From the IMG/VR virus record IMGVR_UViG_3300002835_000007, positions 1-64,000 of that record: a stretch of 64,000 nt of DNA. One strand, given 5' to 3'. The position numbers and the translations under genes were made by a program. This document shows, piece after piece, positions 1-27,059 of the stretch. Each line of letters opens with the position of its first letter. Position 1 is the stretch's first letter. Under the pieces are notes generated by a model. The model did no database searches, was not told the DNA's origin, and saw only the letters and a program-made list of their open reading frames with translations.

Positions 1-282
1 GAAACTGGAAGAGAGGTAGTTTTCTACCCAGAAACTGGAAAAAAATATTACATTGAGTACATCGAACCAAGAAGTTGGAGAACATCTTGGGGTGACATCG
101 ACCCAGCATCAAAAACTGTTACTGGTAGCTATGGTGATAAGTACAGAGGTGCAGTAAAAGCGGAAGAGTCTGTAATAACAAAAGAAAATGGATTTGAAGA
201 AATTGTTGAAGGTGGGGGAAGTCCTTACCACACTATTAATCAAATGCATGATAAATGGAAAAAAGAAAATGGTTATGCTTAA
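1..282 (+). CDS. 5'-truncated phage hypothetical protein
   Basis: Open frame 1 from window start (ETGREVVFYPETGKKYYIEYIEPRSWRTSWGDIDP...) to TAA at 280-282. Confidence 0.7.
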   Translation, partial: ETGREVVFYPETGKKYYIEYIEPRSWRTSWGDIDPASKTVTGSYGDKYRGAVKAEESVITKENGFEEIVEGGGSPYHTINQMHDKWKKENGYA

Positions 283-556
283 TGAAACACAAGTAAAGAA
301 AGACTTATTCAAGTCTAAAGCAATGGCTGTATTCAGTCATTATATGGGTGGTAATTTATATTATCAAGTTGATTTAGCAGATGGTGTATATCAATTTCCT
401 ATTGCAACTATTGAATCAGCTAATGATGGACAATTAAATATTCAATTATCATCAGATTTGGGTACAACAACATTCCCAGCTGAAATAAGAGGTTCTGAAT
501 TAGCAAGATGGATAAGCAAAGCCATAAAGAATGAAACATTTATAAAGCTAGGGTAA
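275..556 (+). CDS. hypothetical protein
   Basis: ATG 275 overlaps upstream stop; in frame with track ORF 188..556. Confidence 0.65.
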   Translation: MLNETQVKKDLFKSKAMAVFSHYMGGNLYYQVDLADGVYQFPIATIESANDGQLNIQLSSDLGTTTFPAEIRGSELARWISKAIKNETFIKLG

Positions 557-568
557 AACCTAGCATAT

Positions 569-640
569 TGGACTGTAACTCAGAGGCAGAGTGCTGATTT
601 TACATGTCAGAAGTCGGGATTTCGAAATTCCCCAGTCCAA
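569..640 (+). tRNA. tRNA-Val(TAC)
   Basis: TGGACTG/CAGTCCA acceptor; CTGAT-TTTACAT-GTCAG anticodon arm; TTCGAAA T loop. Confidence 0.85.
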
Positions 641-654
641 CAAAAATTAAGAAC

Positions 655-834
655 ATGGAAAACTTAGGTCATTCAATATCAGACAATATTGAACATATGA
701 AAAACATACGTGAAGAAATAATTCAGAAATGGATTGATAGTGGGTTACTGGATAATCTAAATGTAACTGGAAAGAAAAACATAGCAGAACTATATGAGGG
801 TTGTGCAACAAGTATGATTAAAGATAAAAAATAG
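655..834 (+). CDS. small protein resembling the N-terminus of gp23-type major capsid proteins
   Basis: ATG 655 after tRNA; KWIDSGLLDNL...NIAELYE pattern recalled from large-phage MCP N-termini. Confidence 0.5.
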   Translation: MENLGHSISDNIEHMKNIREEIIQKWIDSGLLDNLNVTGKKNIAELYEGCATSMIKDKK

Positions 835-905
835 GGGTATAGCTCAGCGGTAGCAGCAATTGCCTTACATGCAATAGGTCGGGGGTTCGAATCCCTCTAC
901 CCCTA
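833..905 (+). tRNA. tRNA-Val(TAC)
   Basis: AGGGGTA/TACCCCT; ATTGC-CTTACAT-GCAAT; GGTTCGAATCC. Confidence 0.93.
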
Positions 906-1034
906 CAGCAGACACACATACCTCTCGAAGAAGTACAAATTGTGTTAATTAAGAATTGATTGACGAATGCATGAACTAGTCAATGATTAATTACGGTGAC
1001 GGGATAGACCACACGGTCAAATGTCTATCCAAAT

Positions 1035-1116
1035 GCCGAGGTGGTGGAATGGTAGACACGAGGGACTTAAAATCCCTTGCCCGTAGGGCGTGAGGGTTCG
1101 AGTCCCTCTCTCGGTA
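1035..1116 (+). tRNA. tRNA-Leu(TAA)
   Basis: GCCGAGG/TCTCGGT; AGGGA-CTTAAAA-TCCCT; long variable arm. Confidence 0.95.
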
Positions 1117-1124
1117 CAACATAT

Positions 1125-1207
1125 GCGGATATGGGGGAATGGTAGACCCGTTGGTCTTAGAAACCAATGCTGAAATATGCGTGTCAGTTCGAGTCTGACT
1201 ATCCGTA
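1125..1207 (+). tRNA. tRNA-Leu(TAG)
   Basis: GCGGATA/TATCCGT; TTGGT-CTTAGAA-ACCAA; long variable arm. Confidence 0.95.
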
Positions 1208-1246
1208 CAAAAAAGTTTTTTTAATAGTGTTACTATATTTATAAGT

Positions 1247-1750
1247 ATGAAAAAACGTATAAAACAATTATTAAGAGAAAATCTAGATAATATTAATGAA
1301 ATTGGTGATTTAAGTTATTATCCACCTTATATTAAAGAAGGAGGTTTTAATATAATAAAGTATGGTGATGATTATGAGATTTCATTTGATGAAGAATCTG
1401 GATATGACGTTAAAATAGATTTTATTGACTTAGTATCAAATAAAAAAACTTATGTTTTAGCGTTTTCTGTTGGTAATAATATGATTCAAAAATTTAAAAC
1501 AACACCTAAAGCGTATTTTAAAATTTTATCTACTGTTGGTGAAGCTTTATTACAATTTTTATCAGAATACGAACCTTTCTTAATTATCATTAATGGTCAA
1601 GATAAGGAAGGTTCAAAAGGTCAAAAAGATTTTATATATAAAAACATTGTAGAAAATAATAAATCTAGACTTAATGAAAAAGGTTACGCATTTGAGGTAG
1701 GGCCTACAAGTGTTAAAATATTTAAAGAAGAAAAAAACGATAATTTATAA
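1247..1750 (+). CDS. hypothetical protein with N-terminal IKQLLRE motif
   Basis: ORF track; preceded by ATATTTAT at 1235-1242. Confidence 0.75.
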   Translation: MKKRIKQLLRENLDNINEIGDLSYYPPYIKEGGFNIIKYGDDYEISFDEESGYDVKIDFIDLVSNKKTYVLAFSVGNNMIQKFKTTPKAYFKILSTVGEALLQFLSEYEPFLIIINGQDKEGSKGQKDFIYKNIVENNKSRLNEKGYAFEVGPTSVKIFKEEKNDNL

Positions 1751-1767
1751 AAAAAAAATAAAAAAAC

Positions 1768-1796
1768 TTGACAATTAAACGAACTTTTAGTATATT
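1768..1796 (+). promoter_or_regulatory. promoter upstream of leader peptide 1
   Basis: TTGACA-N17-TATATT. Confidence 0.7.
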
Positions 1797-1825
1797 AGTG
1801 TATATTTAATTAATAAAGATAAAAA

Positions 1826-1915
1826 ATGAGAACAATTAATAACATATTTGAGTTTGACTTCTTCGCAGCCGAGGCCGATTTTAGCCTAGGGAGGTCAACC
1901 TATGTATGTAGTTAA
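1826..1915 (+). CDS. attenuator leader peptide 1 (MRTINNIFEFDFFAAEADFSLGRSTYVCS)
   Basis: 29-codon ORF with A-rich start; 12 consecutive F/E/D/A codons; overlaps antiterminator strand AGGTCAACCT 1892-1901. Confidence 0.8.
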   Translation: MRTINNIFEFDFFAAEADFSLGRSTYVCS

Positions 1916-1939
1916 TTGTAAGTAACTATACTATATTTG

Positions 1940-1970
1940 AAAGGTTGACCTAAACAGTCAACCTTTTTTT
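1940..1970 (+). terminator. intrinsic terminator of attenuator 1
   Basis: AAAGGTTGAC-CTAAACA-GTCAACCTTT then T-run; 5' arm also perfectly complementary to 1892-1901. Confidence 0.85.
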
Positions 1971-2007
1971 GTTTATATAGGTTTGAAAAAAAAAAATATT
2001 ACAAAAA

Positions 2008-2128
2008 GTTTGGAAGTTTAAAAAATAGTTCATACATTTGTAAAACAAAATTAAAGAAAACGTTCTTTGAAAGATTAAAAAAAAAAATAAAAAACATTTG
2101 CAAATTAAAAATATTATTTATACATTTG
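2008..2128 (+). promoter_or_regulatory. tandem Bacteroidota-type promoters with boxA-like element
   Basis: TTTG...TACATTTG at 2033-2040 and 2121-2128; GTTCTTTGAAAG at 2062-2073. Confidence 0.7.
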
Positions 2129-2142
2129 TAATATCAAAATAA

Positions 2143-2215
2143 GGACAGATAGCTCAGTTGGTAGAGCATCGCACTGAAGATGCGAGTGTCGGGGGTTCGA
2201 TTCCCTCTCTGTCCA
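2143..2215 (+). tRNA. tRNA-Phe(GAA)
   Basis: GGACAGA/TCTGTCC; TCGCA-CTGAAGA-TGCGA. Confidence 0.96.
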
Positions 2216-2223
2216 CAAAACAA

Positions 2224-2297
2224 CGCCCGTTGGACAAGCGGTTTAAGTCGTCTCCCTTTCACGGAGAAGAGCATGGGTTCGAATCCCATACGGGTGA
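2224..2297 (+). tRNA. tRNA-Glu(TTC)
   Basis: CGCCCGT/ACGGGTG; TCTCC-CTTTCAC-GGAGA. Confidence 0.95.
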
Positions 2298-2346
2298 CCT
2301 TGACTTTTTTGTACCTTGTCGTATATTTATTGTAAAAGATAGATAT

Positions 2347-2988
2347 ATGGCAAGAGCAGAAAAGAAAATACATTACCTATATAAAACTACTTGTTTCATA
2401 ACTGGTAGATGGTATATAGGAATGCACAGCACACATAACTTAGAAGATGGTTATATGGGTAGTGGAAAACGATTAAGGTATTCTATACGTAAGTATGGAG
2501 TTGATAATCATAAAAAAGAGATTTTAGAGTTCTTTGAGAGTAGGGAATTATTAATTGAAGCTGAAATAAAAGCAATCACTGAAGATATGGTTACAGATAA
2601 AAACTGTATGAATCTTAAATTAGGTGGCCAAGGAGGTTTTATTAATGAAGAACATAAACAAAAATTCATAAATTCAGATGGACCTAAAAATTTTGCTAAA
2701 AGGTTGATTGAGGATGAAGAATTTAGATTAAAACATTTTGCGATTATATCTGAAAGGATGAAGAAAACACATGCAAATGGTAAAATTAAATATGATACAT
2801 TCAAAGGTAAACAACATTCAGATGAAACTAAACAAAAAATGAGTGAATCATCTAAAGGTAAAGGTATTGGTGAATCAAATAGTCAATACGGTACTTGTTG
2901 GATAACCAAAGAGAGTGTTAATAAAAAAATTAAAAAAGAAGACCTTGACACATACCTAATTGAAGGATGGGTTAAAGGTAGAAGATAA
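2347..2988 (+). CDS. GIY-YIG homing endonuclease (Seg-like) with NUMOD3 motif
   Basis: YLYKTT...WYIGMHST...YMGSG; FKGKQHSDETKQKMSES; true start ATG 2347. Confidence 0.9.
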   Translation: MARAEKKIHYLYKTTCFITGRWYIGMHSTHNLEDGYMGSGKRLRYSIRKYGVDNHKKEILEFFESRELLIEAEIKAITEDMVTDKNCMNLKLGGQGGFINEEHKQKFINSDGPKNFAKRLIEDEEFRLKHFAIISERMKKTHANGKIKYDTFKGKQHSDETKQKMSESSKGKGIGESNSQYGTCWITKESVNKKIKKEDLDTYLIEGWVKGRR

Positions 2989-3056
2989 ACGCTCGCACTG
3001 ATAGTTACGTATCGGTGGAGAGGATGAGTATGACAATCTGGAAAGACAGATATTAC

Positions 3057-3131
3057 GGTCTATTGGTCCAATGGCTAGGATACGGCACTGTCTATGCTGT
3101 GGTGAGAGTTCAATTCTCTCATAGACCGCCA
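3057..3131 (+). tRNA. tRNA-Asp(GTC)
   Basis: GGTCTAT/ATAGACC-G-CCA; CGGCA-CTGTCTA-TGCTG. Confidence 0.9.
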
Positions 3132-3216
3132 ATTGTAAATACCCAGTGGTTTGGTGGGTATGGATACTAAAAGCTATTAAGAGGTTCGAAACTTGAAAAT
3201 AGTTACCAAACCATAT

Positions 3217-3290
3217 GGGGCAGCATGTACCAAGGCTGGCGTTTCTCCCTTGCAAGGAGAGAGTGGAGAGTTCGATTCTCTTCTGCTCCA
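3217..3290 (+). tRNA. tRNA-Ala(TGC), atypical D arm
   Basis: GGGGCAG/CTGCTCC with G3:U70; TCTCC-CTTGCAA-GGAGA. Confidence 0.8.
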
Positions 3291-3291
3291 C

Positions 3292-3480
3292 ATGGAAAAA
3301 TTTAGTTTTGAGGAAGGTATAGATTATTACCTAGAAAAAGGGAAGATAGTTTATACTGAACGCTATCTAAAAAAAAGAGGGACTTGCTGCGGCTCTGGTT
3401 GCAGACATTGTGTTTTCGACCCACCTTATACGAAAGGTAACAAAGTTTTAAAAGAAAACACAAACAAAAATTTGGATTAA
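3292..3480 (+). CDS. DUF5522-like Cys-rich protein
   Basis: YLKKRGTCCGSGCRHC motif; ATG 3292. Confidence 0.8.
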   Translation: MEKFSFEEGIDYYLEKGKIVYTERYLKKRGTCCGSGCRHCVFDPPYTKGNKVLKENTNKNLD

Positions 3481-3744
3481 TCAATAATTTAATGTACATT
3501 TGTAATATGAAAAAAGAAACTAAAATAAAAGTGTTACAGTTAATCGCTAACTATATAGTTAGCATGTTAGAAAATTCACGTAGTGAAGGTATGTTCTATT
3601 ATTATTTTGAAATTGGTGCAATGGTTAATGCATATGCAATTGAATACCACGACATTTATTTAGATTAAAAAAAAAATTAAAAAACATTTGGATTATTAAA
3701 ATATTATCCATACATTTGTAGTATAAATTTAAAAAGTAAATAAA

Positions 3745-4071
3745 ATGAGTAAGTTTGTAAAAACGTTATCAGCATCTAACGCTGAAATCAAAGAAGCAAG
3801 AGCTAAGATGTTAGCTGACACTACTGTATTAGAAGTAGAATCTTTCGTTCAAGCATTGAAGAAAGAAAAATTAGAGTTGCAAAACAAGTTGGCTAACCTA
3901 ACTGACTTAGCACCAGACAACACGTATAGCTTACGTCCAGGTTCAAAAGATTTTGACGCTAAATTATGGGTACGTGAATTACATTCAACTAGAATGGAAA
4001 TCACTCTTAAAGAAATGGAGTTGGAAGAAGCTCAATCAATCTTCAACGAGTGGTTTGGTGAAGAAAAGTAA
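3745..4071 (+). CDS. coiled-coil hypothetical protein
   Basis: ORF track; promoter TACATTTG 3711-3718. Confidence 0.75.
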   Translation: MSKFVKTLSASNAEIKEARAKMLADTTVLEVESFVQALKKEKLELQNKLANLTDLAPDNTYSLRPGSKDFDAKLWVRELHSTRMEITLKEMELEEAQSIFNEWFGEEK

Positions 4072-4074
4072 TCA

Positions 4075-4710
4075 ATGTATTTTAAATTAGATAAATCTAA
4101 AAAAATGAAAAGAGTTTACATTGCAAAGTCCAATAAGGCGAACCCTAACTTAGTTTCAAGAGTTCGCCAAACTCTTTCCGTGTTTGATGTTCAAATCGTT
4201 GAGTTCACTGGTGGTACTTATTCACATGACTTATTATTATCGTGTGATGAGTTGTATGTCATCCCAGATTTAAGTGGTTCTTTTGATGATGATTATACTA
4301 ATATTTGGTCTGTGTCTATCGGTAAAGGTCTGTATGAACAGATACATGCGTTTCACAATAAAACATCAAATAATGATATTTTTATTGTGACCGATTTTGA
4401 TAACAATGTGGGTGTTGGTGGTTTTTATTATGAAGAAAATGATGATGATTTCTATTCAATTTATATAGAAAATGAAAATGACTATGTTGATTATGCGTAT
4501 CTAACAATTAATACAGAAAACGCAACAATAAATCCATGGGACTTATACCATTTTGTTTTAGAATCAAATGAACTTAAAGATGAATCATGGGTATCAAATG
4601 CATTGAATGAATCAATTGCTGAACATAAAACGTGGAAAGAAAAAGCAGCAAATAAAAAATTTTTATATATTGTTGCAAAAAAACTTGCAAAGTTAAAATA
4701 TAGTTTGTAA
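4075..4710 (+). CDS. hypothetical protein
   Basis: ORF track. Confidence 0.7.
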   Translation: MYFKLDKSKKMKRVYIAKSNKANPNLVSRVRQTLSVFDVQIVEFTGGTYSHDLLLSCDELYVIPDLSGSFDDDYTNIWSVSIGKGLYEQIHAFHNKTSNNDIFIVTDFDNNVGVGGFYYEENDDDFYSIYIENENDYVDYAYLTINTENATINPWDLYHFVLESNELKDESWVSNALNESIAEHKTWKEKAANKKFLYIVAKKLAKLKYSL

Positions 4711-4729
4711 ATTTGTAAAAAAAGTAAAT

Positions 4730-5695
4730 ATGAATAATGAAAGTAAAACAGTCGATATCGATATCGACAAACAAAAATTTGAAGAGTTAATTGATTTGTT
4801 AGATGCGTACACAACTATCGGGTCAAAAGTTGGTCGTGATGTAATTGACGGTCATGAGTGTGAAGTAAGGTTTGTTTTAGTAACCCCAGATTTAGCGGCT
4901 GAAATACTAGAAAATTACAATAGCGAAAATAGACCTTTTTCACAAAGTAATGTTGCTAAATTAGTTAAAGAAATTAATTCTGGTAATTGGTCATTCAATG
5001 GAGAACCAATATCTTTCAACAGTAAAGCTAATGTGTCAAATGGTCAACACAGATTACAAGCAATTGTTTTAACTGGTATTGCATTGAGATTTTTAGTTAC
5101 AACTGGTCTTGACCCTAAAAGTTTTGCTACTATGGATAACGGTAGAAAAAGAACTGGTTCTGATGTTTTAGCTATTGCTGGTGTTGGTAATTATACAACT
5201 GCTGCATCTGTTTGTAAATTTGTTTACTCTTTTAAAAACGGAAATTTTGGTTCTGTTTATAGAGCATCAGAAAGTAGAACTTTGACAAATACTCAAATTG
5301 AAAGTTACTACACAACATTAACAAATGTTGATGAGAGCATTAAATTTGGTGCTGCTATGTCGAAAAAAAGTAATGGGTTATTGAAAGCAACTATTTTAGG
5401 TGGGTTTCATTATTTGTTATCTGAGATTGATGAAGTTTTAGCTGATGAGTTTTTAACTAAACTATCAACTGGTATCGATTTAAAACAAGGTTCACCAATT
5501 ATTTCATTAAGAAATAGATTACTTAAATCTACAACTGATGATAATTACAGAATCACTAGTGAAACTTTAATGAAATTAATCGCATATAGTTGGGAGAAAT
5601 TCGTTAAAAACGAAACTGTTAAGAATCTTAAATTACCAGAAAACTATGAAATTAATCTTTATGGTTCATCAAACCAAAAAACATTAAATTTCTAA
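4730..5695 (+). CDS. ParB/Srx-like N-terminal domain protein
   Basis: VTPDLA..NRP..W.FNGEPI..NGQHRL. Confidence 0.7.
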   Translation: MNNESKTVDIDIDKQKFEELIDLLDAYTTIGSKVGRDVIDGHECEVRFVLVTPDLAAEILENYNSENRPFSQSNVAKLVKEINSGNWSFNGEPISFNSKANVSNGQHRLQAIVLTGIALRFLVTTGLDPKSFATMDNGRKRTGSDVLAIAGVGNYTTAASVCKFVYSFKNGNFGSVYRASESRTLTNTQIESYYTTLTNVDESIKFGAAMSKKSNGLLKATILGGFHYLLSEIDEVLADEFLTKLSTGIDLKQGSPIISLRNRLLKSTTDDNYRITSETLMKLIAYSWEKFVKNETVKNLKLPENYEINLYGSSNQKTLNF

Positions 5696-5731
5696 AAAAA
5701 CGTAACCGAAGATAGTTTTTCGGTTACACTT

Positions 5732-5805
5732 GGACCTCTAGCTCATTCGGTTAGAGCAACTGACTCATAATCAGTAGGTGCTTGGTTCGATTCCAAGGTG
5801 GTCCA
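5732..5805 (+). tRNA. tRNA-CAT, probably Ile2 (lysidine type)
   Basis: GGACC.../...GGTCC-A acceptor typical of Ile2; ACTGA-CTCATAA-TCAGT. Confidence 0.85.
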
Positions 5806-5932
5806 CATTTAGGTGATTCTCAGTAATGGAGATAGTAGAATCTTTAGAGTATTGAACATGAAAAGGCTGGCAAACCGTTAAATTATTTCTCAGTAGTGCC
5901 TCACATAACCACTATGATACTCACTAAATTAC

Positions 5933-6006
5933 GGTTCCGTAGCTCAGCTGGATAGAGCCACGCACTTCTAATGCGTAGGTCACACGTTCGAATCGTGTCG
6001 GAATCA
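5933..6006 (+). tRNA. tRNA-Arg(TCT)
   Basis: GGTTCCG/CGGAATC; ACGCA-CTTCTAA-TGCGT. Confidence 0.95.
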
Positions 6007-6012
6007 CAATAA

Positions 6013-6138
6013 TGGAAGGTAGCCCAATTGGTAGAGGCAGCGGAATGCAAAAAGATTAATCTGTTTTAAAGATTAAGTTCAGCAATTTAAACGCTATTTA
6101 GGAACCGAAAAGTGTTAGTTCGAATCTAACCCTTCCGA
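6013..6138 (+). ncRNA. tRNA body with ~50-nt CAGCAA module inserted in the anticodon arm
   Basis: TGGAAGG/CCTTCCG acceptor, D arm, GTTAG-TTCGAAT-CTAAC T arm; insert TTAATCT/AGATTAA hairpin + GTTCAGCAA. Confidence 0.75.
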
Positions 6139-6446
6139 CAAAAGAAGAGTGAGCAGCATTAGCCAAGTTGGAACGAGTACCAGCGTGAAGGTCAAAAATA
6201 CTCGGCTCATGACTTCTGAAAAAAAGTTTGAAAAAAACTTGCAAATGTAAAATAAAGTTAGTACATTTGTAGTATAGAAAAAGTTCTTTGAAAAGTATTA
6301 GAAATGAGGGTGTTACATTCTTAAATTTCTTTAAAAAAGTTACTAAAAAACTTGACATTTGCTTAAAAATGTCGTATATTAGTAACATAAAAATTGGATT
6401 AATTATCATAAAATAAAAAAGTAAAAAAAAAAAGAAAAAAAAGAGT

Positions 6447-7082
6447 ATGGCAACACCAAAAAGTACACCAGCAAGAAAAGCTTCTGCAAATACAGAAGTA
6501 GTTTTAGGACAAGCAGCAGCACAAATCGCTAAGGCTGTTAACGAATTAAAAGCAGCAACTGCAACAGTTTCTACTTTATCTGACCAGTCAGAGCAATTAA
6601 CTATGTTAGTAGCTAACAAAGAGGAGTCAATCGCTTCATTAGAAGTAGAGTACGCTGAGAAACGTAGACAATATGACGTTGAGTTAGAATTGTCTTTCAA
6701 AGCTAACCAAGAAAGAGTTGTAAATGAGTGGTTACGTTCAAACGGATACACATCTATTTCAACAGCTGACTTAACAACTTTACGTTCTGATTTAGAAACT
6801 TCTAGAACAAACACTGAAGCAACAGTTAAGAAAGAAGTAGCTACTGTAGCTGCAACTTTAAAATCTCAGTACGAGAATGAAATTAAATTAATTCACTCTG
6901 AGAACAAAGCTGTTGCTGCTGAAAACGCTGCAAAAATTGGTACGTTAGCAACACAAAACTCGTTCTTACAAGAACAAGTTACTAAGTTGTACGAACAATT
7001 AGATGCTGAGCGTTCTGCTGGTATCGAAAGAGCGAAAGCTGGGTCAGTAGGTTCAATTAACGTTGCACCAGCTGGTAAGTAA
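6447..7082 (+). CDS. coiled-coil hypothetical protein
   Basis: ORF track; Ala/Glu/Lys-rich heptads. Confidence 0.8.
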   Translation: MATPKSTPARKASANTEVVLGQAAAQIAKAVNELKAATATVSTLSDQSEQLTMLVANKEESIASLEVEYAEKRRQYDVELELSFKANQERVVNEWLRSNGYTSISTADLTTLRSDLETSRTNTEATVKKEVATVAATLKSQYENEIKLIHSENKAVAAENAAKIGTLATQNSFLQEQVTKLYEQLDAERSAGIERAKAGSVGSINVAPAGK

Positions 7083-7126
7083 TTAGCAATGATATTCTAC
7101 GTGGGGAACTGCGTAGAATGTTACAA

Positions 7127-7267
7127 GGGTAAAAAGATTATTTCAGCAACCAAAAATTCAAGCCTTGTTAATGCCGTGGTCGTGGGTTCGAATCCCACAC
7201 TGTCCATGATAATGGGCGGTTAGCTCAGCTGGTTAGAGCACGTATGAAAAAAAGTTAATCTTGTCCC
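7127..7267 (+). ncRNA. circularly permuted tRNA-like RNA (T arm-acceptor-D arm) closed by CAGCAA stem
   Basis: AAGATTA(7134)/TAATCTT(7256); T arm 7182-7198; ACTGTCC(7199)/GGGCGGT(7214); D arm GCTC/GAGC. Confidence 0.8.
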
Positions 7268-7296
7268 CCAAATTGGAGTCCTCTGCTCCTTAAACA

Positions 7297-7437
7297 GAGT
7301 AATTAAAAGATTGTTTCAGCAATTAAACTCAAAAATTGTATGGATAACAAGCGGTCTGGGTTCGAATCCCAGCATGTCCTAACAGAGGTGTGGGCGTGTG
7401 GTGTAATGGTAGCACAAAAAGAGCAATCTTGATACTC
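7297..7437 (+). ncRNA. second circularly permuted tRNA-like RNA closed by CAGCAA stem
   Basis: AAGATTG(7307)/CAATCTT(7424); T arm 7356-7372; CATGTCC(7373)/GGGCGTG(7392); D arm GTG-TAATGGTAG-CAC. Confidence 0.8.
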
Positions 7438-7441
7438 AAAT

Positions 7442-7519
7442 ATGGCGTTAGCTCAGCTGGTAGAGCACTGTTGGTTTTAACTGGCAGATGGGTCGTAGGT
7501 TTGAATCCTACACGCTGTA
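7442..7519 (+). pseudogene. aberrant tRNA (Lys-like loop, 7-bp anticodon stem)
   Basis: Normal D arm and GTAGG-TTTGAAT-CCTAC T arm; CTGTTGG-TTTTAA-CTGGCAG arm; weak acceptor. Confidence 0.6.
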
Positions 7520-7681
7520 CAATGTTTCTTTGTTTTATAAAACAAAGTGGTGGTAGTCTGGGGTGTTAAAACTCTCGGTCCCAAAAAAATAAGGTTGGTA
7601 ATTTACTGTAAAGCTATGGCTTCCTTCAAAAAAGTGGCACTATCGTTTGGTAGTGTCATTTTTTATTTGTACCTTTGTCAA

Positions 7682-8164
7682 ATGAAAACAAAAAGAATTA
7701 GTTTAAATTATCAATTAGGTATGATGGTAGGTGAATACATCGTAGCACTACATTTACCAACACTTAGCACAGATATGCTAAAATCTAGAACAATTATCCA
7801 AGTATCTGAAGAAGAAACTGCTGAATGGGAAACCTTAGAGAAAAAGGAAGAACCATATTGGTTTAACGACAAAAAAAGGGAAGAAGATGAAGAAGGTTAT
7901 TTGAAATCTTTTTATGATAATCGTAAATGGTATCATAAATTGGAAGAAAAATATCTACCAGAAACAATCAAAGTTCCAGTACCTAGAGTAGTACCAACCA
8001 ATATTAATAGATTTGCTGAAGGTATCAAAGATACTTTGTGGAATTGTGATATGTCACATTATAGAATTCAAGAAGGGTTTTTTGAGCAAACAGAAGACAT
8101 TGCATGGTGTTCTTATATTATTTTAACAAGACACATAGAAAAAATTCCAGAAAAGTTTGCATAA
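7682..8164 (+). CDS. hypothetical protein
   Basis: ATG 7682 after TACCTTTG promoter-like site. Confidence 0.7.
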   Translation: MKTKRISLNYQLGMMVGEYIVALHLPTLSTDMLKSRTIIQVSEEETAEWETLEKKEEPYWFNDKKREEDEEGYLKSFYDNRKWYHKLEEKYLPETIKVPVPRVVPTNINRFAEGIKDTLWNCDMSHYRIQEGFFEQTEDIAWCSYIILTRHIEKIPEKFA

Positions 8165-15291: not shown

Positions 15292-15322
15292 TTGACAAAT
15301 GTAAAAAAAGTTCGTACATTTG
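15292..15322 (+). promoter_or_regulatory. promoter upstream of leader peptide 2
   Basis: TTGACA-N17-TACATTTG. Confidence 0.75.
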
Positions 15323-15378
15323 TAGTATAATTTTGAATTTTAAAAAAAAACGATATATTTAATTAATACAAAAGCGAA

Positions 15379-15474
15379 ATGAAAACAACAGTTACTACAT
15401 ATCAACCGAAACAAACGCAAGGCGGAAAGCCTAGTGTATCGGGTATGTTATATCTGTTGAGTAACGAAGAATAA
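15379..15474 (+). CDS. attenuator leader peptide 2 (MKTTVTTYQPKQTQGGKPSVSGMLYLLSNEE)
   Basis: 31-codon ORF; K/T/Y/Q/P/G block; overlaps antiterminator strand ATCGGGT 15438-15444. Confidence 0.8.
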   Translation: MKTTVTTYQPKQTQGGKPSVSGMLYLLSNEE

Positions 15475-15498
15475 AGATTCTAAATTACAAGATATTCC

Positions 15499-15531
15499 AA
15501 ACCCGATTTCAGAAATGACATCGGGTTTTTT
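15499..15531 (+). terminator. intrinsic terminator of attenuator 2
   Basis: AAACCCGAT-T-TCA-GAAA-TGA-C-ATCGGGTTT then T-run. Confidence 0.85.
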
Positions 15532-15627
15532 GTTTTAGGTACCTATGCCTCTTAAAAAATAGGAACGTTATTTGACATGTTGGTTTATTTTGGGTTGTAC
15601 ATATACAATAGTAGGAATGTAAATTAT

Positions 15628-15701
15628 CGAGTAGTATAGGAGTGGTTTATCTAGCGGCATTTGGAATGCCGAGCACGTTGGTTCGAATCCAACCTATTCG
15701 A
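15628..15701 (+). tRNA. tRNA-Pro(TGG)
   Basis: CGAGTAG/CTATTCG; CGGCA-TTTGGAA-TGCCG. Confidence 0.92.
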
Positions 15702-15751
15702 CCCTAATGGTTTCCCATAAGCCATTAAAAAAACAAGTTATGGGAAGTTAT

Positions 15752-15825
15752 TTTCCGATAGACAAACTGGCAAAGTCACTCGCCTTTGAAGTGAGAATTT
15801 GGGGGTTCGAAGCCCTCTCGGAAAT
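15752..15825 (+). tRNA. tRNA-Gln(TTG)
   Basis: TTTCCGA/TCGGAAA; CTCGC-CTTTGAA-GTGAG. Confidence 0.9.
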
Positions 15826-15883
15826 CAAAAAAAATAAAAAAACTTGCATATGTTAAAAATAGTTCATACATTTGTAAAAGAAA

Positions 15884-15957
15884 AATAAAAGATAGCTTCA
15901 GCAATTTCACAACTATCAAACTTTTAATTTGAATCAGAAAATGCTATCTTGATTTAT
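15884..15957 (+). ncRNA. CAGCAA-stem RNA displaying a lone Lys(UUU) anticodon hairpin
   Basis: AAGATAGC(15889)/GCTATCTT(15943), TTCAGCAA, TCAAA-CTTTTAA-TTTGA 15916-15932; own promoter TACATTTG 15867. Confidence 0.7.
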
Positions 15958-16043
15958 TGGAGGGTGGCCGAGTGGTTAAAGGCGGCAGACTGTAAATCTG
16001 TTCTCGTAAGGGTACGGGGGTTCGAATCCCTCCCCTCCAACCA
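15958..16043 (+). tRNA. tRNA-Tyr(GTA)
   Basis: GCAGA-CTGTAAA-TCTGT; long variable arm; ACCA end. Confidence 0.96.
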
Positions 16044-16051
16044 AAAATTAT

Positions 16052-16124
16052 GCCTTTGTAGCACAGCTGGTAGTGCACTTCACTTGTAATGAAGGGGTCG
16101 TAGGTTCGAATCCTATCAAAGGCT
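16052..16124 (+). tRNA. tRNA-Thr(TGT)
   Basis: GCCTTTG/CAAAGGC; CTTCA-CTTGTAA-TGAAG. Confidence 0.96.
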
Positions 16125-16216
16125 CACGTGTTAACTAGGGTCGAGCCACATTTTGCCTCGGTTAACAATAGAAGAAAGAACCTAGAGGTGGCCGTGACTG
16201 TCTTTCTTCGAAATTT

Positions 16217-16289
16217 GCAGATATCGTATAATGGTTTATTATATTAGCCTTCCAAGCCTAGGATTTCAGTTCGATTCTGAATATCTGCT
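16217..16289 (+). tRNA. tRNA-Gly(TCC), imperfect anticodon stem
   Basis: GCAGATA/TATCTGC-T; loop CTTCCAA. Confidence 0.8.
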
Positions 16290-16348
16290 CAAAAAGAGGA
16301 ATAACAAGTGTGGATGCCTCAAGGTACAGCTGACCTACCACACTCTAT

Positions 16349-16420
16349 GCGAGAGTAGCTCAGTGGTAGAGCATCTGGTTACCAACCAGAGGGTCGTGGG
16401 TTCGAATCCCATCTCTCGCT
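16349..16420 (+). tRNA. tRNA-Gly(ACC)
   Basis: GCGAGAG/CTCTCGC-T Gly-type body; TCTGG-TTACCAA-CCAGA. Confidence 0.9.
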
Positions 16421-16428
16421 CAAAATAT

Positions 16429-16555
16429 GGGGGTGTTGAAATGTTAGATAAATCACATTCTGCCTTTTAGATTAAAGAATGTTTGCAGCAAAATCAAAAT
16501 TATTCACGCAAACTGTAAATTTGATAAAACGTTGGTGCAATTCCAGCCGCCCCCA
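16429..16555 (+). ncRNA. tRNA-like ends enclosing CAGCAA module and Tyr(GUA) anticodon hairpin
   Basis: GGGGGTG/CGCCCCC-A; ACATTCT/AGAATGT + TTGCAGCAA; CAAA-CTGTAAA-TTTG; GTTGG-TGCAATT-CCAGC. Confidence 0.7.
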
Positions 16556-16678
16556 CTAAAATAAAATTATAAAAAACTTAAAAAATAAAAACTATGAAAA
16601 ATTCTATCAACATTAAGCGAAAGATAAAACGATAAGGCACTCGGCCAAGCTGGTTACGAGTGTCAATGGAAAAAACAC

Positions 16679-16752
16679 GCCTTCGTAGCTCAGCTGGATA
16701 GAGCACTCCACTTTTAATGGAGGGGTCATGGGTTCGAGTCCCATCGGGGGTA
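16679..16752 (+). tRNA. tRNA-Lys(TTT)
   Basis: CTCCA-CTTTTAA-TGGAG; full cloverleaf. Confidence 0.94.
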
Positions 16753-16757
16753 CATAT

Positions 16758-16830
16758 GTACTCGTAGCTTAGTTGGTAGAGCACTCCGCTTTTAACGGAG
16801 GGGTCAAGAGTTCGAATCTCTTCGGGTACA
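16758..16830 (+). tRNA. tRNA-Lys(TTT)
   Basis: GTACTCG/CGGGTAC; CTCCG-CTTTTAA-CGGAG. Confidence 0.94.
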
Positions 16831-16861
16831 CAACTATTAATAAACCAACATGTAACGTATT

Positions 16862-25439: not shown

Positions 25440-27059
25440 ATGCAATCAGAAACTAGAAGATTAAAAAGAAGTTTAGCACTTAAAGAAGTGATTAAAACTA
25501 GATTGGCAGAAGCAATTAAAAACAAAGATTGGTCTTCAATCGAAACATTAGAAGGTCTTATCACAAAAGTATTGGATAAACCTAACAACCTTGTACTTAT
25601 GGGTGATGCGTATAAATACTCACACCATAAATTCTATGAGGATAACACAACAACAGTTTATTCATACATGGAGTCACGTGGTGGTCGTTTCCAAGAAACT
25701 GTATGGTATGGTCTTGAAATGTTCATTAAAGAATATTTAGAAGGTGTTGCAATCACACAAGAAGAATTAGATGAAGCATATGAGTACTTAGGTACTAAAC
25801 ATGGTGTATTTGGTCGTGATGATGTGTTTGATAAATCTAAATTCCAATACATTATAGATGTTCATGGTGGTAAACTACCAGTACGTATTAAAGCAGTACA
25901 AGAAGGTACAGTTGTAGGTGTTAAAAACGTTCTTATGACTATTGAGAACACTGACCCTAATTGTTATTGGTTAACTAACTTTTTAGAAACAATCATGATG
26001 CAATTATGGTATCCAATTACGGTTGCAACATTGTCACGTGAAGTTAAGAAAATTGTTATCGAATACTACCAAAAAACATCTGCGTTACCACAACACATTA
26101 TGGATACAGTTATTGAGTTCGTATTAAACGATTTCGGTTTTAGAGGTGTATCATCAGTACAATCAGCTGGTTACGGTGGTTCAGCACACTTAATTAATTT
26201 TATGGGTTCTGACACAACAGTTGCATCAAAACGTATCTGTGAATACTATAATACTGACACAATATTTGGTTTATCAGTTCCAGCAACTGAACACTCTATC
26301 ATGACAATGAAAGGTGAAGAAGGTGAAGTTGAAATGATGAGAAGAACACTTGAGAAATACCCTACTGGAATTGTAGCGTGTGTATCTGACTCTTACCACA
26401 TCTTACGTGCATGTTCTGAGAAATGGGGAACTGAGTTACGTGATTTGATTTTATCAAGACCATCAGAACCTGGAAATCAACTGGTTATTCGTCCAGATAG
26501 TGGTCACGTTGTCAACACATTAAAAGAAGTGTTTGCTATATTGTTTGATAAATTTGGTTACACTGTGAATGATAAAGGGTTCAAATTGTTACCACCACAA
26601 GTTCGTGTAATTCAAGGTGATGGTGTAAACATCAATTCAATTCGTGAGATTTACGAAGAATTATACAGATTAGGTATTTCTGCTGAGAACATCGTGTTTG
26701 GTATGGGTGGTAAATTGTTACAAGCTGATATTAATAGAGATACACAAAACTTTGCAACTAAAGCATGTTTCGCTGTCGTAAATGGTGAACAACGTGATTT
26801 GGTTAAATCACCAACAGAAGTTGATGAAAATGGTGAATTAAAACCATCATTCAAGAAATCTAAACAAGGTCGTTTGAAGTTGGTTAAACACTATACAAAT
26901 GGTCAATACTACACTGTAACATCATTGGAAGATGGATATGAATCTGCACATGATGAATTGAGAACTATTTTTGAAGATGGTAAACTATTGGTTGAAACGA
27001 AGTTTGAAGATATTCGTAGTAGAGCTAAAATTTTTAAATTAAACGTAGAATTAGTATAA
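25440..27059 (+). CDS. nadV: nicotinamide phosphoribosyltransferase
   Basis: DAYKYSH, DFGFRG, SVPATEHS, VSDSY, IRPDSG, IQGDG, FGMGG. Confidence 0.95.
   Translation: MQSETRRLKRSLALKEVIKTRLAEAIKNKDWSSIETLEGLITKVLDKPNNLVLMGDAYKYSHHKFYEDNTTTVYSYMESRGGRFQETVWYGLEMFIKEYLEGVAITQEELDEAYEYLGTKHGVFGRDDVFDKSKFQYIIDVHGGKLPVRIKAVQEGTVVGVKNVLMTIENTDPNCYWLTNFLETIMMQLWYPITVATLSREVKKIVIEYYQKTSALPQHIMDTVIEFVLNDFGFRGVSSVQSAGYGGSAHLINFMGSDTTVASKRICEYYNTDTIFGLSVPATEHSIMTMKGEEGEVEMMRRTLEKYPTGIVACVSDSYHILRACSEKWGTELRDLILSRPSEPGNQLVIRPDSGHVVNTLKEVFAILFDKFGYTVNDKGFKLLPPQVRVIQGDGVNINSIREIYEELYRLGISAENIVFGMGGKLLQADINRDTQNFATKACFAVVNGEQRDLVKSPTEVDENGELKPSFKKSKQGRLKLVKHYTNGQYYTVTSLEDGYESAHDELRTIFEDGKLLVETKFEDIRSRAKIFKLNVELV

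What the first reader, a model, noticed from the sequence alone, without database searches (positions are those of the whole stretch)
1768..3290. Leader-peptide attenuator whose sensing codons spell the downstream tRNA array (Phe/Glu/Asp/Ala)
Seen in sequence: a promoter (TTGACA-N17-TATATT) precedes an unannotated ORF, MRTINNIFEFDFFAAEADFSLGRSTYVCS (1826-1915). Codons 8-19 encode only F, E, D and A, and the next four tRNAs are Phe(GAA), Glu(TTC), Asp(GTC) and Ala(TGC). The ORF end contains AGGTCAACCT (1892-1901), a perfect complement of the 5' arm (1942-1951) of the terminator at 1940-1970, so terminator and antiterminator exclude each other. Established knowledge: this is the layout of trp/his/phe ribosome-stalling attenuators. 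Inference: when these charged tRNAs run low (starvation or host anticodon nucleases), stalling permits read-through and the phage resupplies those tRNAs. The early codons AGA and ATA also match tRNA-Arg(TCT) and Ile2 further downstream. Caveat: two more promoter-like sites (2033, 2121) lie between the terminator and the tRNAs.
Basis: partly seen in the sequence, partly recalled or inferred. Interest (0 to 1): 0.95.

Follow-up and report, generated by a model that had tools for sequence, protein, structure and literature searches.

The report
Leader-peptide attenuators gating phage tRNA clusters
In front of each group of its tRNA genes, this large bacteriophage carries a tiny gene whose codons call for exactly those tRNAs, followed by a stop/go RNA switch, so it probably makes more of a tRNA group only when ribosomes run short of it; I found no earlier report of this classic bacterial control logic applied to tRNA genes.

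Summary
Window 1768-1974 has the full anatomy of a trp-type attenuator: a promoter, a 29-codon ORF, three mutually exclusive helices (1:2, 2:3, 3:4) and a T-run. Codons 8-19 use only F, E, D and A, and the next tRNAs are Phe, Glu, Asp and Ala.

The decisive evidence is that this cassette is not unique. A second one lies at 15292-15534; its leader uses K, T, Y, Q, P and G ahead of tRNAs Pro, Gln, Tyr, Thr, Gly, Gly, Lys, Lys. Related phage contigs carry two more families (L/C/V before Cys-Val-Leu; H/W/S/N/I/M/R before His-Trp-Ser-Asn-Ile/Met-Arg). A fifth family occurs in another phage group.

- **Set match:** no random partition of the amino acids reached the observed match (0 of 200,000).
- **Covariation:** terminator stems differ completely between cassettes, and the ORF segment that pairs with each stem changes with it.
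- **Leader variation:** it is mostly synonymous or stays inside the cluster's amino-acid set.

No experiment exists. In this window two further promoters sit between the terminator and tRNA-Phe. I found no precedent. I rate it a new variant of a known mechanism, of high interest.

The parts
1768..1796 (+). P1, the promoter of the leader transcript (TTGACA-N17-TATATT; the -7 box reads TATATTAG).
   Evidence: 11 of 12 matches. The homologous site in relatives is a perfect Bacteroidota-type TTG-N20-TATATTTG (L004) or TACATTTG (L005).
1801..1810 (+). TATATTTAAT box in the 5' UTR, shared by all leader families; its function is unknown.
   Evidence: it occurs only twice in the window, both times in leader 5' UTRs; it was used to retrieve the other cassettes.
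1826..1915 (+). Leader ORF of 29 codons plus TAA (family B).
   Evidence: ORF length, start and stop are kept in relatives, and third codon positions vary most.
1847..1882 (+). Sensing run, codons 8-19, encoding F, E, D and A only.
   Evidence: It is the only 12-of-12 FEDA run in six frames of the window. Ten of the 12 codons are decodable by the four downstream tRNAs under strict wobble.
1832..1861 (+). Region 1, the 5' strand of helix 1:2 (anti-antiterminator); it overlaps the first sensing codons.
   Evidence: MFE structures.
1869..1890 (+). Small internal hairpin enclosed by helix 1:2; possibly an RNA polymerase pause hairpin (inference).
   Evidence: An equivalent hairpin is predicted in most cassettes of all five families (14 of the 15 folds).
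1891..1919 (+). Region 2. It is the 3' strand of helix 1:2, and 1892-1914 is the 5' strand of the antiterminator. It contains the stop codon.
1923..1951 (+). Region 3, the 3' strand of the antiterminator; 1939-1949 is also the 5' arm of the terminator.
   Evidence: the antiterminator is the MFE structure when the 3' arm is absent or the 5' end is removed.
1939..1974 (+). Intrinsic terminator: 11-bp stem, 7-nt loop and a T-run.
2010..2040 (+). P2, a Bacteroidota-type promoter (TTG-N-TACATTTG) downstream of the terminator.
   Evidence: It is conserved in L002 and L004 and absent in L010.
2098..2128 (+). P3, a second such promoter, 15 nt upstream of tRNA-Phe.
2143..2299 (+). tRNA-Phe(gaa) 2143-2216 and tRNA-Glu(ttc) 2224-2299.
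2347..2988 (+). GIY-YIG/NUMOD3 homing-endonuclease-like ORF inserted in the cluster. It is not part of the switch.
   Evidence: NUMOD3. It is absent at this place in L004 and L002.
3057..3291 (+). tRNA-Asp(gtc) 3057-3131 and an atypical tRNA-Ala(tgc) 3220-3291.
   Evidence: Asp is also found by Rfam; Ala is not.
15292..15322 (+). Promoter of the second cassette (family C): TTGACA...TACATTTG.
15379..15474 (+). Leader ORF C (31 codons). Sixteen of codons 2-18 are K, T, Y, Q, P or G. Region 2 lies at 15434-15445.
   Evidence: It is the only window of 17 codons with at least 16 from PQYTGK in the 64-kb window.
15499..15534 (+). Terminator of cassette C (AAACCCGAT...ATCGGGTTT plus a T-run).
   Evidence: The simple scanner misses it because the loop is 12 nt.
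15627..16831 (+). tRNA cluster Pro, Gln, Tyr, Thr, Gly, Gly, Lys, Lys, controlled by cassette C.
569..1208 (+). tRNAs Val, Val, Leu, Leu: the distal part of a family-A cluster. Its leader and tRNA-Cys lie beyond the window and contig start.
   Evidence: Synteny with L002, where leader A at 4431-4505 precedes Cys, Val, Val, Leu, Leu.

Best explanation
The element is a ribosome-mediated (leader-peptide) transcription attenuator that gates read-through from promoter P1 into the tRNA-Phe/Glu/Asp/Ala cluster. It is one of a family of paralogous cassettes in a group of large, probably Bacteroidota-infecting, phages.

**Mechanism**
- RNA polymerase starts at P1, and a ribosome translates the 29-codon leader.
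- When cognate aminoacyl-tRNAs are plentiful, the ribosome runs through region 2 to the stop codon. The terminator's 5' arm stays free, hairpin 1939-1967 forms and transcription ends.
- When any of tRNA-Phe, Glu, Asp or Ala is scarce, the ribosome stalls on codons 8-19 and occupies region 1. Region 2 then pairs with region 3, which blocks the terminator, and polymerase continues into the tRNA genes.
- Without translation, helix 1:2 and the terminator form.

**Net effect**
The result is negative feedback: each tRNA cluster is transcribed more when its own tRNAs limit translation.

**Shown versus inferred**
- Shown: the anatomy, its conservation and covariation, and the codon-to-cluster correspondence.
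- Inferred: translation of the leader, stalling, read-through, and the physiological trigger.
For: **1. Anatomy in the window**
- Promoter, ORF and terminator are present.
- The full-length MFE structure is helix 1:2 plus terminator, z=-5.4.
- The antiterminator 1892-1914 / 1923-1951 is the MFE structure once region 1 or the 3' arm is absent.

**2. Replication across cassettes**
- An unbiased screen (short ORF, then terminator, then a same-strand tRNA) over the 53 sequences held at the time returned essentially only such cassettes; the one other ORF it listed (L005) has no T-run after its hairpin and its nearest tRNA 848 nt away.
- Five leader families precede clusters they spell.
- In-set codons number 50 of 73 for the true leader-cluster pairing. 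The next best of 24 pairings gives 33, and 0 of 200,000 random partitions reach 50.
- Per-leader binomial p-values run from 2e-3 down to 5e-11, with E at 0.027. Every amino acid of each cluster's set appears in its leader.

**3. Match at codon level**
- Leader A uses TTA and CTN, matching Leu taa and tag.
- Leader D uses AGA and CGC, matching Arg tct and acg.
- Leader D also uses TCG and AGT, matching Ser tga and gct.

**4. Covariation**
- Terminator stems are unrelated between cassettes.
- ORF codons ~19-26 (29-35 in the longer family-E leader) pair with the cognate 5' arm in 14 of 15 nascent-transcript folds.
- The cognate pairing beats codon shuffles at p<=0.056 in 11 of 15.

**5. Helix 1:2** is predicted in 15 of 15 cassettes.

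**6. Placement of the sensing run**
It ends at or within a few codons after the last codon where a stalled ribosome would still leave region 2 free, exactly so in families B and E.

**7. Signs of translation**
- Third codon positions vary most.
- Core codons change only synonymously, including box switches TTA<->CTT and AGT<->TCG.
- Replacements stay inside the set, for example TTT->GAA.
- ORF length and the stop codon are conserved.

**8. Direct contact with the target**
- In family A the terminator ends 8-11 nt before tRNA-Cys (10-13 nt by the coordinates, 61 nt by ARAGORN in L010; the sequences).
- In B of L010 it ends about 13 nt before tRNA-Asp, with no internal promoter.
Against: - No transcript, ribosome or reporter data exist.
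- In this window two good promoters (2010-2040 and 2098-2128) lie between the terminator and tRNA-Phe. The attenuator can therefore only add to a basal level here.
- With the complete terminator present, equilibrium folding keeps the terminator favoured in most cassettes whatever the ribosome position. The switch would have to be kinetic, as it is in trp.
- Without a ribosome, the nascent-transcript MFE structure already shows 2:3 rather than 1:2 in 14 of 15 cassettes.
- Antiterminators of B in L007 and L019 are weak (p=0.17 and 0.61).
- Two of the three Ala codons are GCC, which tRNA-Ala(UGC) does not read under strict wobble. That tRNA also looks degenerate.
- The extra tRNA with anticodon gtga in L002 is not mirrored in its leader.
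- Family E matches its cluster only weakly.
- Transcription-translation coupling in the unknown host is assumed, not shown.
Confidence: 0.8

Rival explanations
1. Coincidence: the hairpin is just the terminator of the upstream gene (1247-1750), the short ORF is spurious, and the F/E/D/A match to the next tRNAs is a post-hoc pattern in AT-rich DNA.
For: Sigma-70-like hits in 1-8000 are no more frequent than in shuffles (28 versus 33.5). 108 twelve-codon stretches in the window use four or fewer amino acids.
Against: The hairpin has its own promoter and lies about 190 nt after the upstream stop codon. Four more leader families each match their own cluster. ORF length and frame are conserved across diverged relatives. 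The antiterminator covaries with the terminator.
Confidence: 0.02
2. A real leader-peptide attenuator, but one that reports amino-acid starvation, or times the infection programme, for protein-coding genes embedded in or beyond the clusters. The tRNA genes would be bystanders.
For: Protein ORFs sit inside or after the clusters (2347-2988 and 3295-5695). Classic attenuators sense amino-acid supply. Making more tRNA does not relieve starvation.
Against: In family A and in B of L010 the terminator abuts the first tRNA. The embedded ORFs vary between relatives, while the tRNA sets and leader sets stay matched. Codon choice follows the isoacceptors present.
Confidence: 0.07
3. An untranslated RNA switch: tRNAs or a small RNA bind the 'codons' directly, in the manner of a T-box, or the transcript is a stable small RNA of the tRNA region.
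For: The region is strongly structured (z=-5.4). No Shine-Dalgarno sequence precedes the ATG.
Against: Rfam gives no T-box or other family hit at E<=1. Start, stop, frame and ORF length are conserved. Third-position variation is in excess, and there are synonymous codon-box switches and in-set replacements that change all three bases. Twelve to twenty different specifier triplets in a row have no precedent. Absence of a Shine-Dalgarno sequence is normal for Bacteroidota (established knowledge).
Confidence: 0.04
4. The leader is translated, but the output is not intrinsic termination. Leader translation might instead control precursor processing or stability, or Rho access, or the peptide itself might be the product.
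For: Equilibrium models do not show a clean switch in most cassettes. The C-terminal tails of the peptides differ in length.
Against: Every cassette has a canonical hairpin plus T-run. Every cassette also has an ORF segment complementary to that hairpin's 5' arm at a fixed position. Peptide sequence outside the set rule is poorly conserved.
Confidence: 0.05

Closest known systems
Leader-peptide transcription attenuators of amino-acid operons (trpL, hisL, pheL/pheM, leuL, thrL, ilvL/ivbL)
   Same: A promoter; a short ORF with a run of regulatory codons; overlapping helices 1:2, 2:3 and 3:4; an intrinsic terminator; and multi-amino-acid sensing as in the thr and ilv leaders.
   Different: - The regulated genes are tRNA genes, not enzymes or synthetases.
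- The regulatory codons cover 3 to about 10 different amino acids, which equal the tRNA set downstream.
- The cassettes are phage-encoded and occur as several paralogous copies that together partition all 20 amino acids.
- No Rfam leader family matches.
T-box riboswitches
   Same: They sense the state of a specific tRNA and choose between terminator and antiterminator.
   Different: - A T-box binds uncharged tRNA directly, has no ORF, and carries a conserved Stem I and T-box sequence.
- T-boxes regulate synthetase and amino-acid genes, mostly in Firmicutes.
- No T-box match was found here, and an ORF under coding-type constraint is present.
Phage tRNA arrays (T4, T5 and huge phages), seen as codon compensation or as counter-defence to tRNA-cleaving immunity (PMC10264068, PMC11464382)
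   Same: Clustered phage tRNA genes interspersed with homing endonucleases, whose proposed role is to keep translation going when host tRNAs are unsuitable or destroyed.
   Different: In six full-text searches I found no report of feedback control of such arrays. Here each array has a sensor for its own tRNAs.
Stalling leader peptides of inducible resistance and catabolic genes (ermC, cat, tnaC)
   Same: A ribosome stalled on a short upstream ORF remodels downstream RNA.
   Different: Those stall through nascent-peptide and ligand effects and mostly control translation or Rho. Here the predicted cue is codon-specific tRNA supply, and the output is intrinsic termination.

Membership tests
Leader-peptide (ribosome-mediated) transcription attenuator | A promoter followed by a short ORF whose start and stop are kept in relatives. 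| tested here: met
   Eight family-A DNA versions all have 24 codons and five family-B versions all have 29 codons; stop codons interchange between TAA and TAG.
Leader-peptide (ribosome-mediated) transcription attenuator | A run of regulatory codons tied to what the downstream genes supply. | tested here: met
   Twelve of 12 FEDA codons precede Phe, Glu, Asp and Ala. Across four families 50 of 73 codons are in set, and 0 of 200,000 random partitions match that.
Leader-peptide (ribosome-mediated) transcription attenuator | An intrinsic terminator between the leader and the regulated genes. | tested here: met
   Hairpin 1939-1967 plus T-run. The same is seen in every cassette.
Leader-peptide (ribosome-mediated) transcription attenuator | An antiterminator that shares nucleotides with the terminator. 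| tested here: met
   1892-1914 pairs with 1923-1951. The cognate arm covaries with the terminator in 14 of 15 cassettes.
Leader-peptide (ribosome-mediated) transcription attenuator | An anti-antiterminator (1:2) overlapping the regulatory codons, so that a stalled ribosome frees region 2. | tested here: met
   Predicted in 15 of 15 cassettes. The positional logic is supported. This rests on prediction only.
Leader-peptide (ribosome-mediated) transcription attenuator | Regulated genes encode biosynthetic enzymes or the synthetase for the sensed amino acid. This is typical of all described members. | tested here: not met
   The downstream genes are tRNAs. This is the point of novelty.
Leader-peptide (ribosome-mediated) transcription attenuator | The leader is translated, and read-through rises when cognate charged tRNA is limiting. 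| not testable with these tools
   This needs Ribo-seq, Term-seq or reporters. Only indirect coding-type variation is available.
Curated Rfam leader families (Trp, His, Leu, Thr, Phe leaders) | A covariance-model match. | tested here: not met
   cmscan of 1-8000 at E<=1 lists no leader family.
T-box riboswitch | Stem I with specifier loop and a conserved T-box/antiterminator sequence, detectable with the Rfam model. | tested here: not met
   No T-box hit at E<=1.
Bacteroidota sigma-A type promoter (-33 TTTG / -7 TAnnTTTG; consensus from my own knowledge of Bacteroides and Flavobacterium work) | TTG, then 18-21 nt, then TAnnTTTG upstream of genes, with strand bias. | tested here: met
   34 sites on the coding strand versus 5 on the other strand and about 5 expected by chance. 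P1 itself is one base off (TATATTAG) in the window and perfect in L004, L005, L010 and L019.

The most novel reading that the evidence does not exclude
The phage runs a four-channel tRNA-supply homeostat. All 20 amino acids' tRNAs are split into four regulons (C/V/L; F/E/D/A; P/Q/Y/T/G/K; H/W/S/N/I/M/R). Each regulon sits behind a bespoke multi-codon leader, so ribosome stalling on any one codon class switches on just that group. In this reading the system senses tRNA abundance rather than amino-acid supply. It would then be an inducible countermeasure to host tRNA decay, or to tRNA-cleaving or tRNA-depleting antiphage defences. That would make it the first direct translational feedback on tRNA gene transcription.
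Probability: 0.35. Interest if true: 0.95.

Novelty: new variant of a known kind. Interest (0 to 1): 0.9.

Why it matters
**For bacterial gene regulation.** tRNA genes are textbook examples of promoter-level, growth-rate and stringent control. A codon-by-codon feedback from the ribosome to tRNA gene transcription would be a new regulatory principle for the translation apparatus.

**For phage biology.** It would show that phage tRNA arrays are regulated on demand rather than simply expressed. That bears on the open question of why phages carry tRNAs: codon compensation, replacement of degraded host tRNAs, or escape from tRNA-targeting immunity (PMC10264068, PMC11464382).

**For testing the question.** The leaders are readable predictions of which tRNAs the phage treats as one unit. 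They therefore give a direct experimental handle.

**As a tool.** The cassettes are compact (about 200 nt), modular, codon-programmable sensors of tRNA availability. They could serve as reporters in Bacteroidota.

Tried and rejected
- **Public phage genomes.** megablast and blastn of the region found only tRNA-level or chance matches. tblastn of the upstream protein found nothing.
- **Nearest deposited relative.** LR756500.1 is a 462-kb uncultured phage with a 69% identical OmpA-like protein. I fetched 41.7 kb around that gene, but it holds no tRNAs or cassettes.
- **Bacterial genomes.** Scanning 185,579 species representatives with the promoter/UTR pattern gave 93 chance hits, none followed by tRNAs. 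I found no host version and no host identification.
- **Equilibrium masking with the full terminator.** It gave a clean switch only for the window's cassette and for family A in L010. I therefore turned to nascent-transcript models.
- **MAFFT alignment of family B.** It puts unrelated terminators out of register. I did not use the count of structure pairs or RNAalifold, and measured covariation per cassette against codon shuffles instead.
- **Arm-only duplex matrix.** The cognate pair was not always the best, because the G-rich arm of family A is promiscuous. Including the first loop bases fixed the register.
- **L010 odd tRNAs.** I tested whether the Ser-rich tail of its A leader tracks an extra tRNA-Ser. 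The 88-nt tRNA there looks Leu-like, so there is no support.
- **Literature.** Seven of the nine searches looked for a precedent or for leader-peptide attenuators in Bacteroidetes, and none found one.
Full report
**1. Where the window comes from**

The window is the first 64 kb of IMG/VR contig UViG_3300002835_000007, which is 205,931 bp long. GC content is 31%, and 19 tRNA genes all lie on the + strand. No cultured phage is close. The best deposited relative is an unannotated 462-kb uncultured phage.

The motif TTG-N18-21-TAnnTTTG occurs 34 times on the coding strand. It occurs 5 times on the other strand, and about 5 are expected by chance. From my own knowledge this is the Bacteroidota housekeeping-promoter consensus, so a Bacteroidota host is likely but unproven.

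**2. The observation**

- promoter 1768-1796;
- ORF 1826-1915;
- codons 8-19 made only of F, E, D and A;
- AGGTCAACCT at 1892-1901, complementary to 1942-1951;
- hairpin 1939-1967 followed by a T-run;
- tRNAs Phe, Glu, Asp and Ala next on the same strand.

Three qualifications apply. A homing-endonuclease-like ORF separates Glu from Asp. The tRNA-Ala is atypical.

**3. Anatomy**

The full element folds far better than shuffles (z=-5.4). The structure is a long helix between 1832-1861 (region 1, which covers the first sensing codons) and 1891-1919 (region 2). That helix encloses a small hairpin and is followed by the terminator.

When region 1 or the terminator's 3' arm is removed, the minimum-energy structure changes. 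It becomes a 23-bp interrupted helix between 1892-1914 and 1923-1951, which consumes the terminator's 5' arm and has the stop codon near its tip. This is the 1:2 / 2:3 / 3:4 layout of trp-type attenuators.

**4. It is not unique**

Reading upstream of the other tRNA clusters showed the same cassette again.
- **Window 15292-15534.** A promoter, the same TATATTTAAT box in the 5' UTR and a 31-codon ORF. Codons 2-18 read K-T-T-V-T-T-Y-Q-P-K-Q-T-Q-G-G-K-P. The ORF contains a copy of the terminator's 3' arm. A terminator follows, then tRNAs Pro, Gln, Tyr, Thr, Gly, Gly, Lys, Lys.
- **L002, a close relative.** A 24-codon ORF with the core L-L-L-C-L-L-V-V precedes Cys, Val, Val, Leu, Leu. The window's first four tRNAs are the tail of that cluster.

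A pattern built from the shared promoter and UTR retrieved more cassettes from viral and metagenome contigs. This added two families:
- **Family D:** I-H-M-I-S-I-S-N-W-R-R-N-S-H-H before His, Trp, Ser, Asn, Ile or Met(cat), Arg, Arg, Ser.
- **Family E:** from a different phage group, a 37-codon leader before a ten-tRNA array.

A diverged lineage (L010, L267) has families A, B and C with different promoters and terminators but the same amino-acid sets. In L267 all 20 of 20 sensing codons are in set.

An unbiased screen for 'short ORF, then terminator, then same-strand tRNA' over the 53 sequences held at that point returned essentially only these cassettes. Its one other listing, an 18-codon ORF in L005, has no T-run after its hairpin and its nearest tRNA 848 nt away.

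Sets A, B, C and D together cover all 20 amino acids without overlap.

**5. Statistics**

| Test | Result |
|---|---|
| In-set sensing codons, true leader-cluster pairing | 50 of 73 |
| Best of the 23 wrong pairings | 33 |
| Random partitions of the amino acids reaching 50 | 0 of 200,000 |
| 12-of-12 FEDA runs in the window's six frames | 1 (the B leader) |
| Runs with at least 16 of 17 PQYTGK | 1 (the C leader) |
| Binomial p per leader, against the window's own proteome | 2e-3 to 5e-11; E 0.027 |

Every amino acid of every cluster's set appears in its leader. Codon choice follows the isoacceptors present: both Leu boxes in A, and both Arg and both Ser boxes in D.

**6. Evidence for the RNA switch across cassettes**

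- Terminator stems are unrelated in sequence between cassettes. In 14 of 15 nascent-transcript folds the 5' arm is nevertheless paired to ORF codons ~19-26 (29-35 in the longer family-E leader). Energies beat codon-shuffled ORFs at p<=0.056 in 11 of 15.
- Region 2 pairs back onto the sensing codons in 15 of 15 cassettes before region 3 exists.
- With a 30-nt footprint stepped along the ORF, the antiterminator survives a stall at any codon up to about the end of the sensing run. It collapses at the last sensing codons or just after them, exactly at the run's end in families B and E. In the window the probability is 0.73 up to D18, 0.60 at F19 and 0.11 at S20.
- Equilibrium folding with the complete terminator favours termination in most cassettes whatever the ribosome position. 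The choice must therefore be kinetic, as is accepted for trp (established knowledge).

**7. Evidence for translation**

- Third codon positions vary most: 11/9/15 variable sites in A, 6/6/13 in B and 5/3/9 in E (codon positions 1/2/3).
- Core codons change only synonymously. This includes multi-base box switches (TTA<->CTT, AGT<->TCG).
- Replacements stay in set, for example F19 to E by TTT->GAA.
- ORF length and the stop codon are conserved.
- The missing Shine-Dalgarno sequence is normal for Bacteroidota (own knowledge).

**8. Mechanism and caveats**

The best reading is negative feedback. Scarcity of any tRNA of a cluster stalls the leader ribosome, the antiterminator forms, and polymerase reads into that cluster.

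In family A, and in B of L010, the terminator touches the first tRNA, so the tRNAs are the direct target. In this window P2 and P3 give the cluster an independent supply, so the attenuator would add an inducible component.

More tRNA does not cure amino-acid starvation. Sensing of tRNA abundance therefore makes more sense: host tRNA decay, codon mismatch, or tRNA-targeting defences (context in PMC10264068 and PMC11464382). This last step is inference.

**9. Novelty**

- Rfam holds no matching leader or T-box family.
- Six full-text searches found no report of leader-peptide attenuators in front of tRNA genes or in phage tRNA arrays; a seventh found nothing on such attenuators in Bacteroidetes.
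- The same cassette pattern was not found upstream of tRNAs in bacterial species representatives.

The mechanism class is classical. The target, the multi-amino-acid 'spelling' of a tRNA set, and the genome-wide partition into regulons are new. My verdict: a new variant of a known kind, with high interest, pending experiment.

Noticed in passing
window 6013-6138 and 7204-7380: tRNA-like genes interrupted by inserts of about 50-110 nt. Both inserts carry TTCAGCAATT(T)AAAC. Rfam calls 6013-6138 a tRNA at 34 bits. These may be intron-containing or insertion-bearing tRNAs.
   Followed up: no
window 7104-7265 and 7442-7520: Weak sub-threshold YrlA-like (39 bits, gathering score 69) and tmRNA-like hits, and an ARAGORN tRNA with a four-base anticodon 'ttta'. 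L002 has a similar odd tRNA with anticodon 'gtga'.
   Followed up: no
window 3220-3291: tRNA-Ala(tgc) has G3:U70, a good anticodon arm and a good T arm, but a degenerate D arm. ARAGORN calls it and Rfam does not at E<=1. L002 has both a normal and an odd Ala copy; the window keeps only the odd one.
   Followed up: partly
window 1247-1750; L002 3853-4341: The genes just upstream of the family-B and family-A cassettes are paralogs (42% identity, E=1e-29), with a faint DUF6934 match. The whole module of gene, leader and tRNA cluster may have been duplicated. The protein's function is unknown.
   Followed up: partly
window 2990-3056 and 3132-3219; L019 1455-1520 and 1775-1860: Spacers between tRNAs are conserved between diverged relatives. 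This suggests processed small RNAs or processing signals.
   Followed up: no
L004 205-237 versus window 1939-1967: The terminator loop in L004 is the reverse complement of the window's (TGTTTAG versus CTAAACA) with identical stems. The hairpin appears to have been inverted.
   Followed up: no
window 1801-1810 and 15354-15363: The TATATTTAAT box lies between promoter and start codon in all leader families. It occurs nowhere else in the window. Its role is unknown.
   Followed up: partly
window 5696-5731: The Met(cat)/Arg(tct) cluster has no leader ORF. A 9-bp hairpin (GTAACCGAA...TTCGGTTAC) without a T-run sits directly before tRNA-Met.
   Followed up: no
window 25440-27059 and 42488-44473: The phage encodes a NAMPT-type nicotinamide phosphoribosyltransferase and an RNase II/R-family (RNB) exoribonuclease with S1 and cold-shock domains. 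The RNase could bear on host RNA or tRNA turnover.
   Followed up: no
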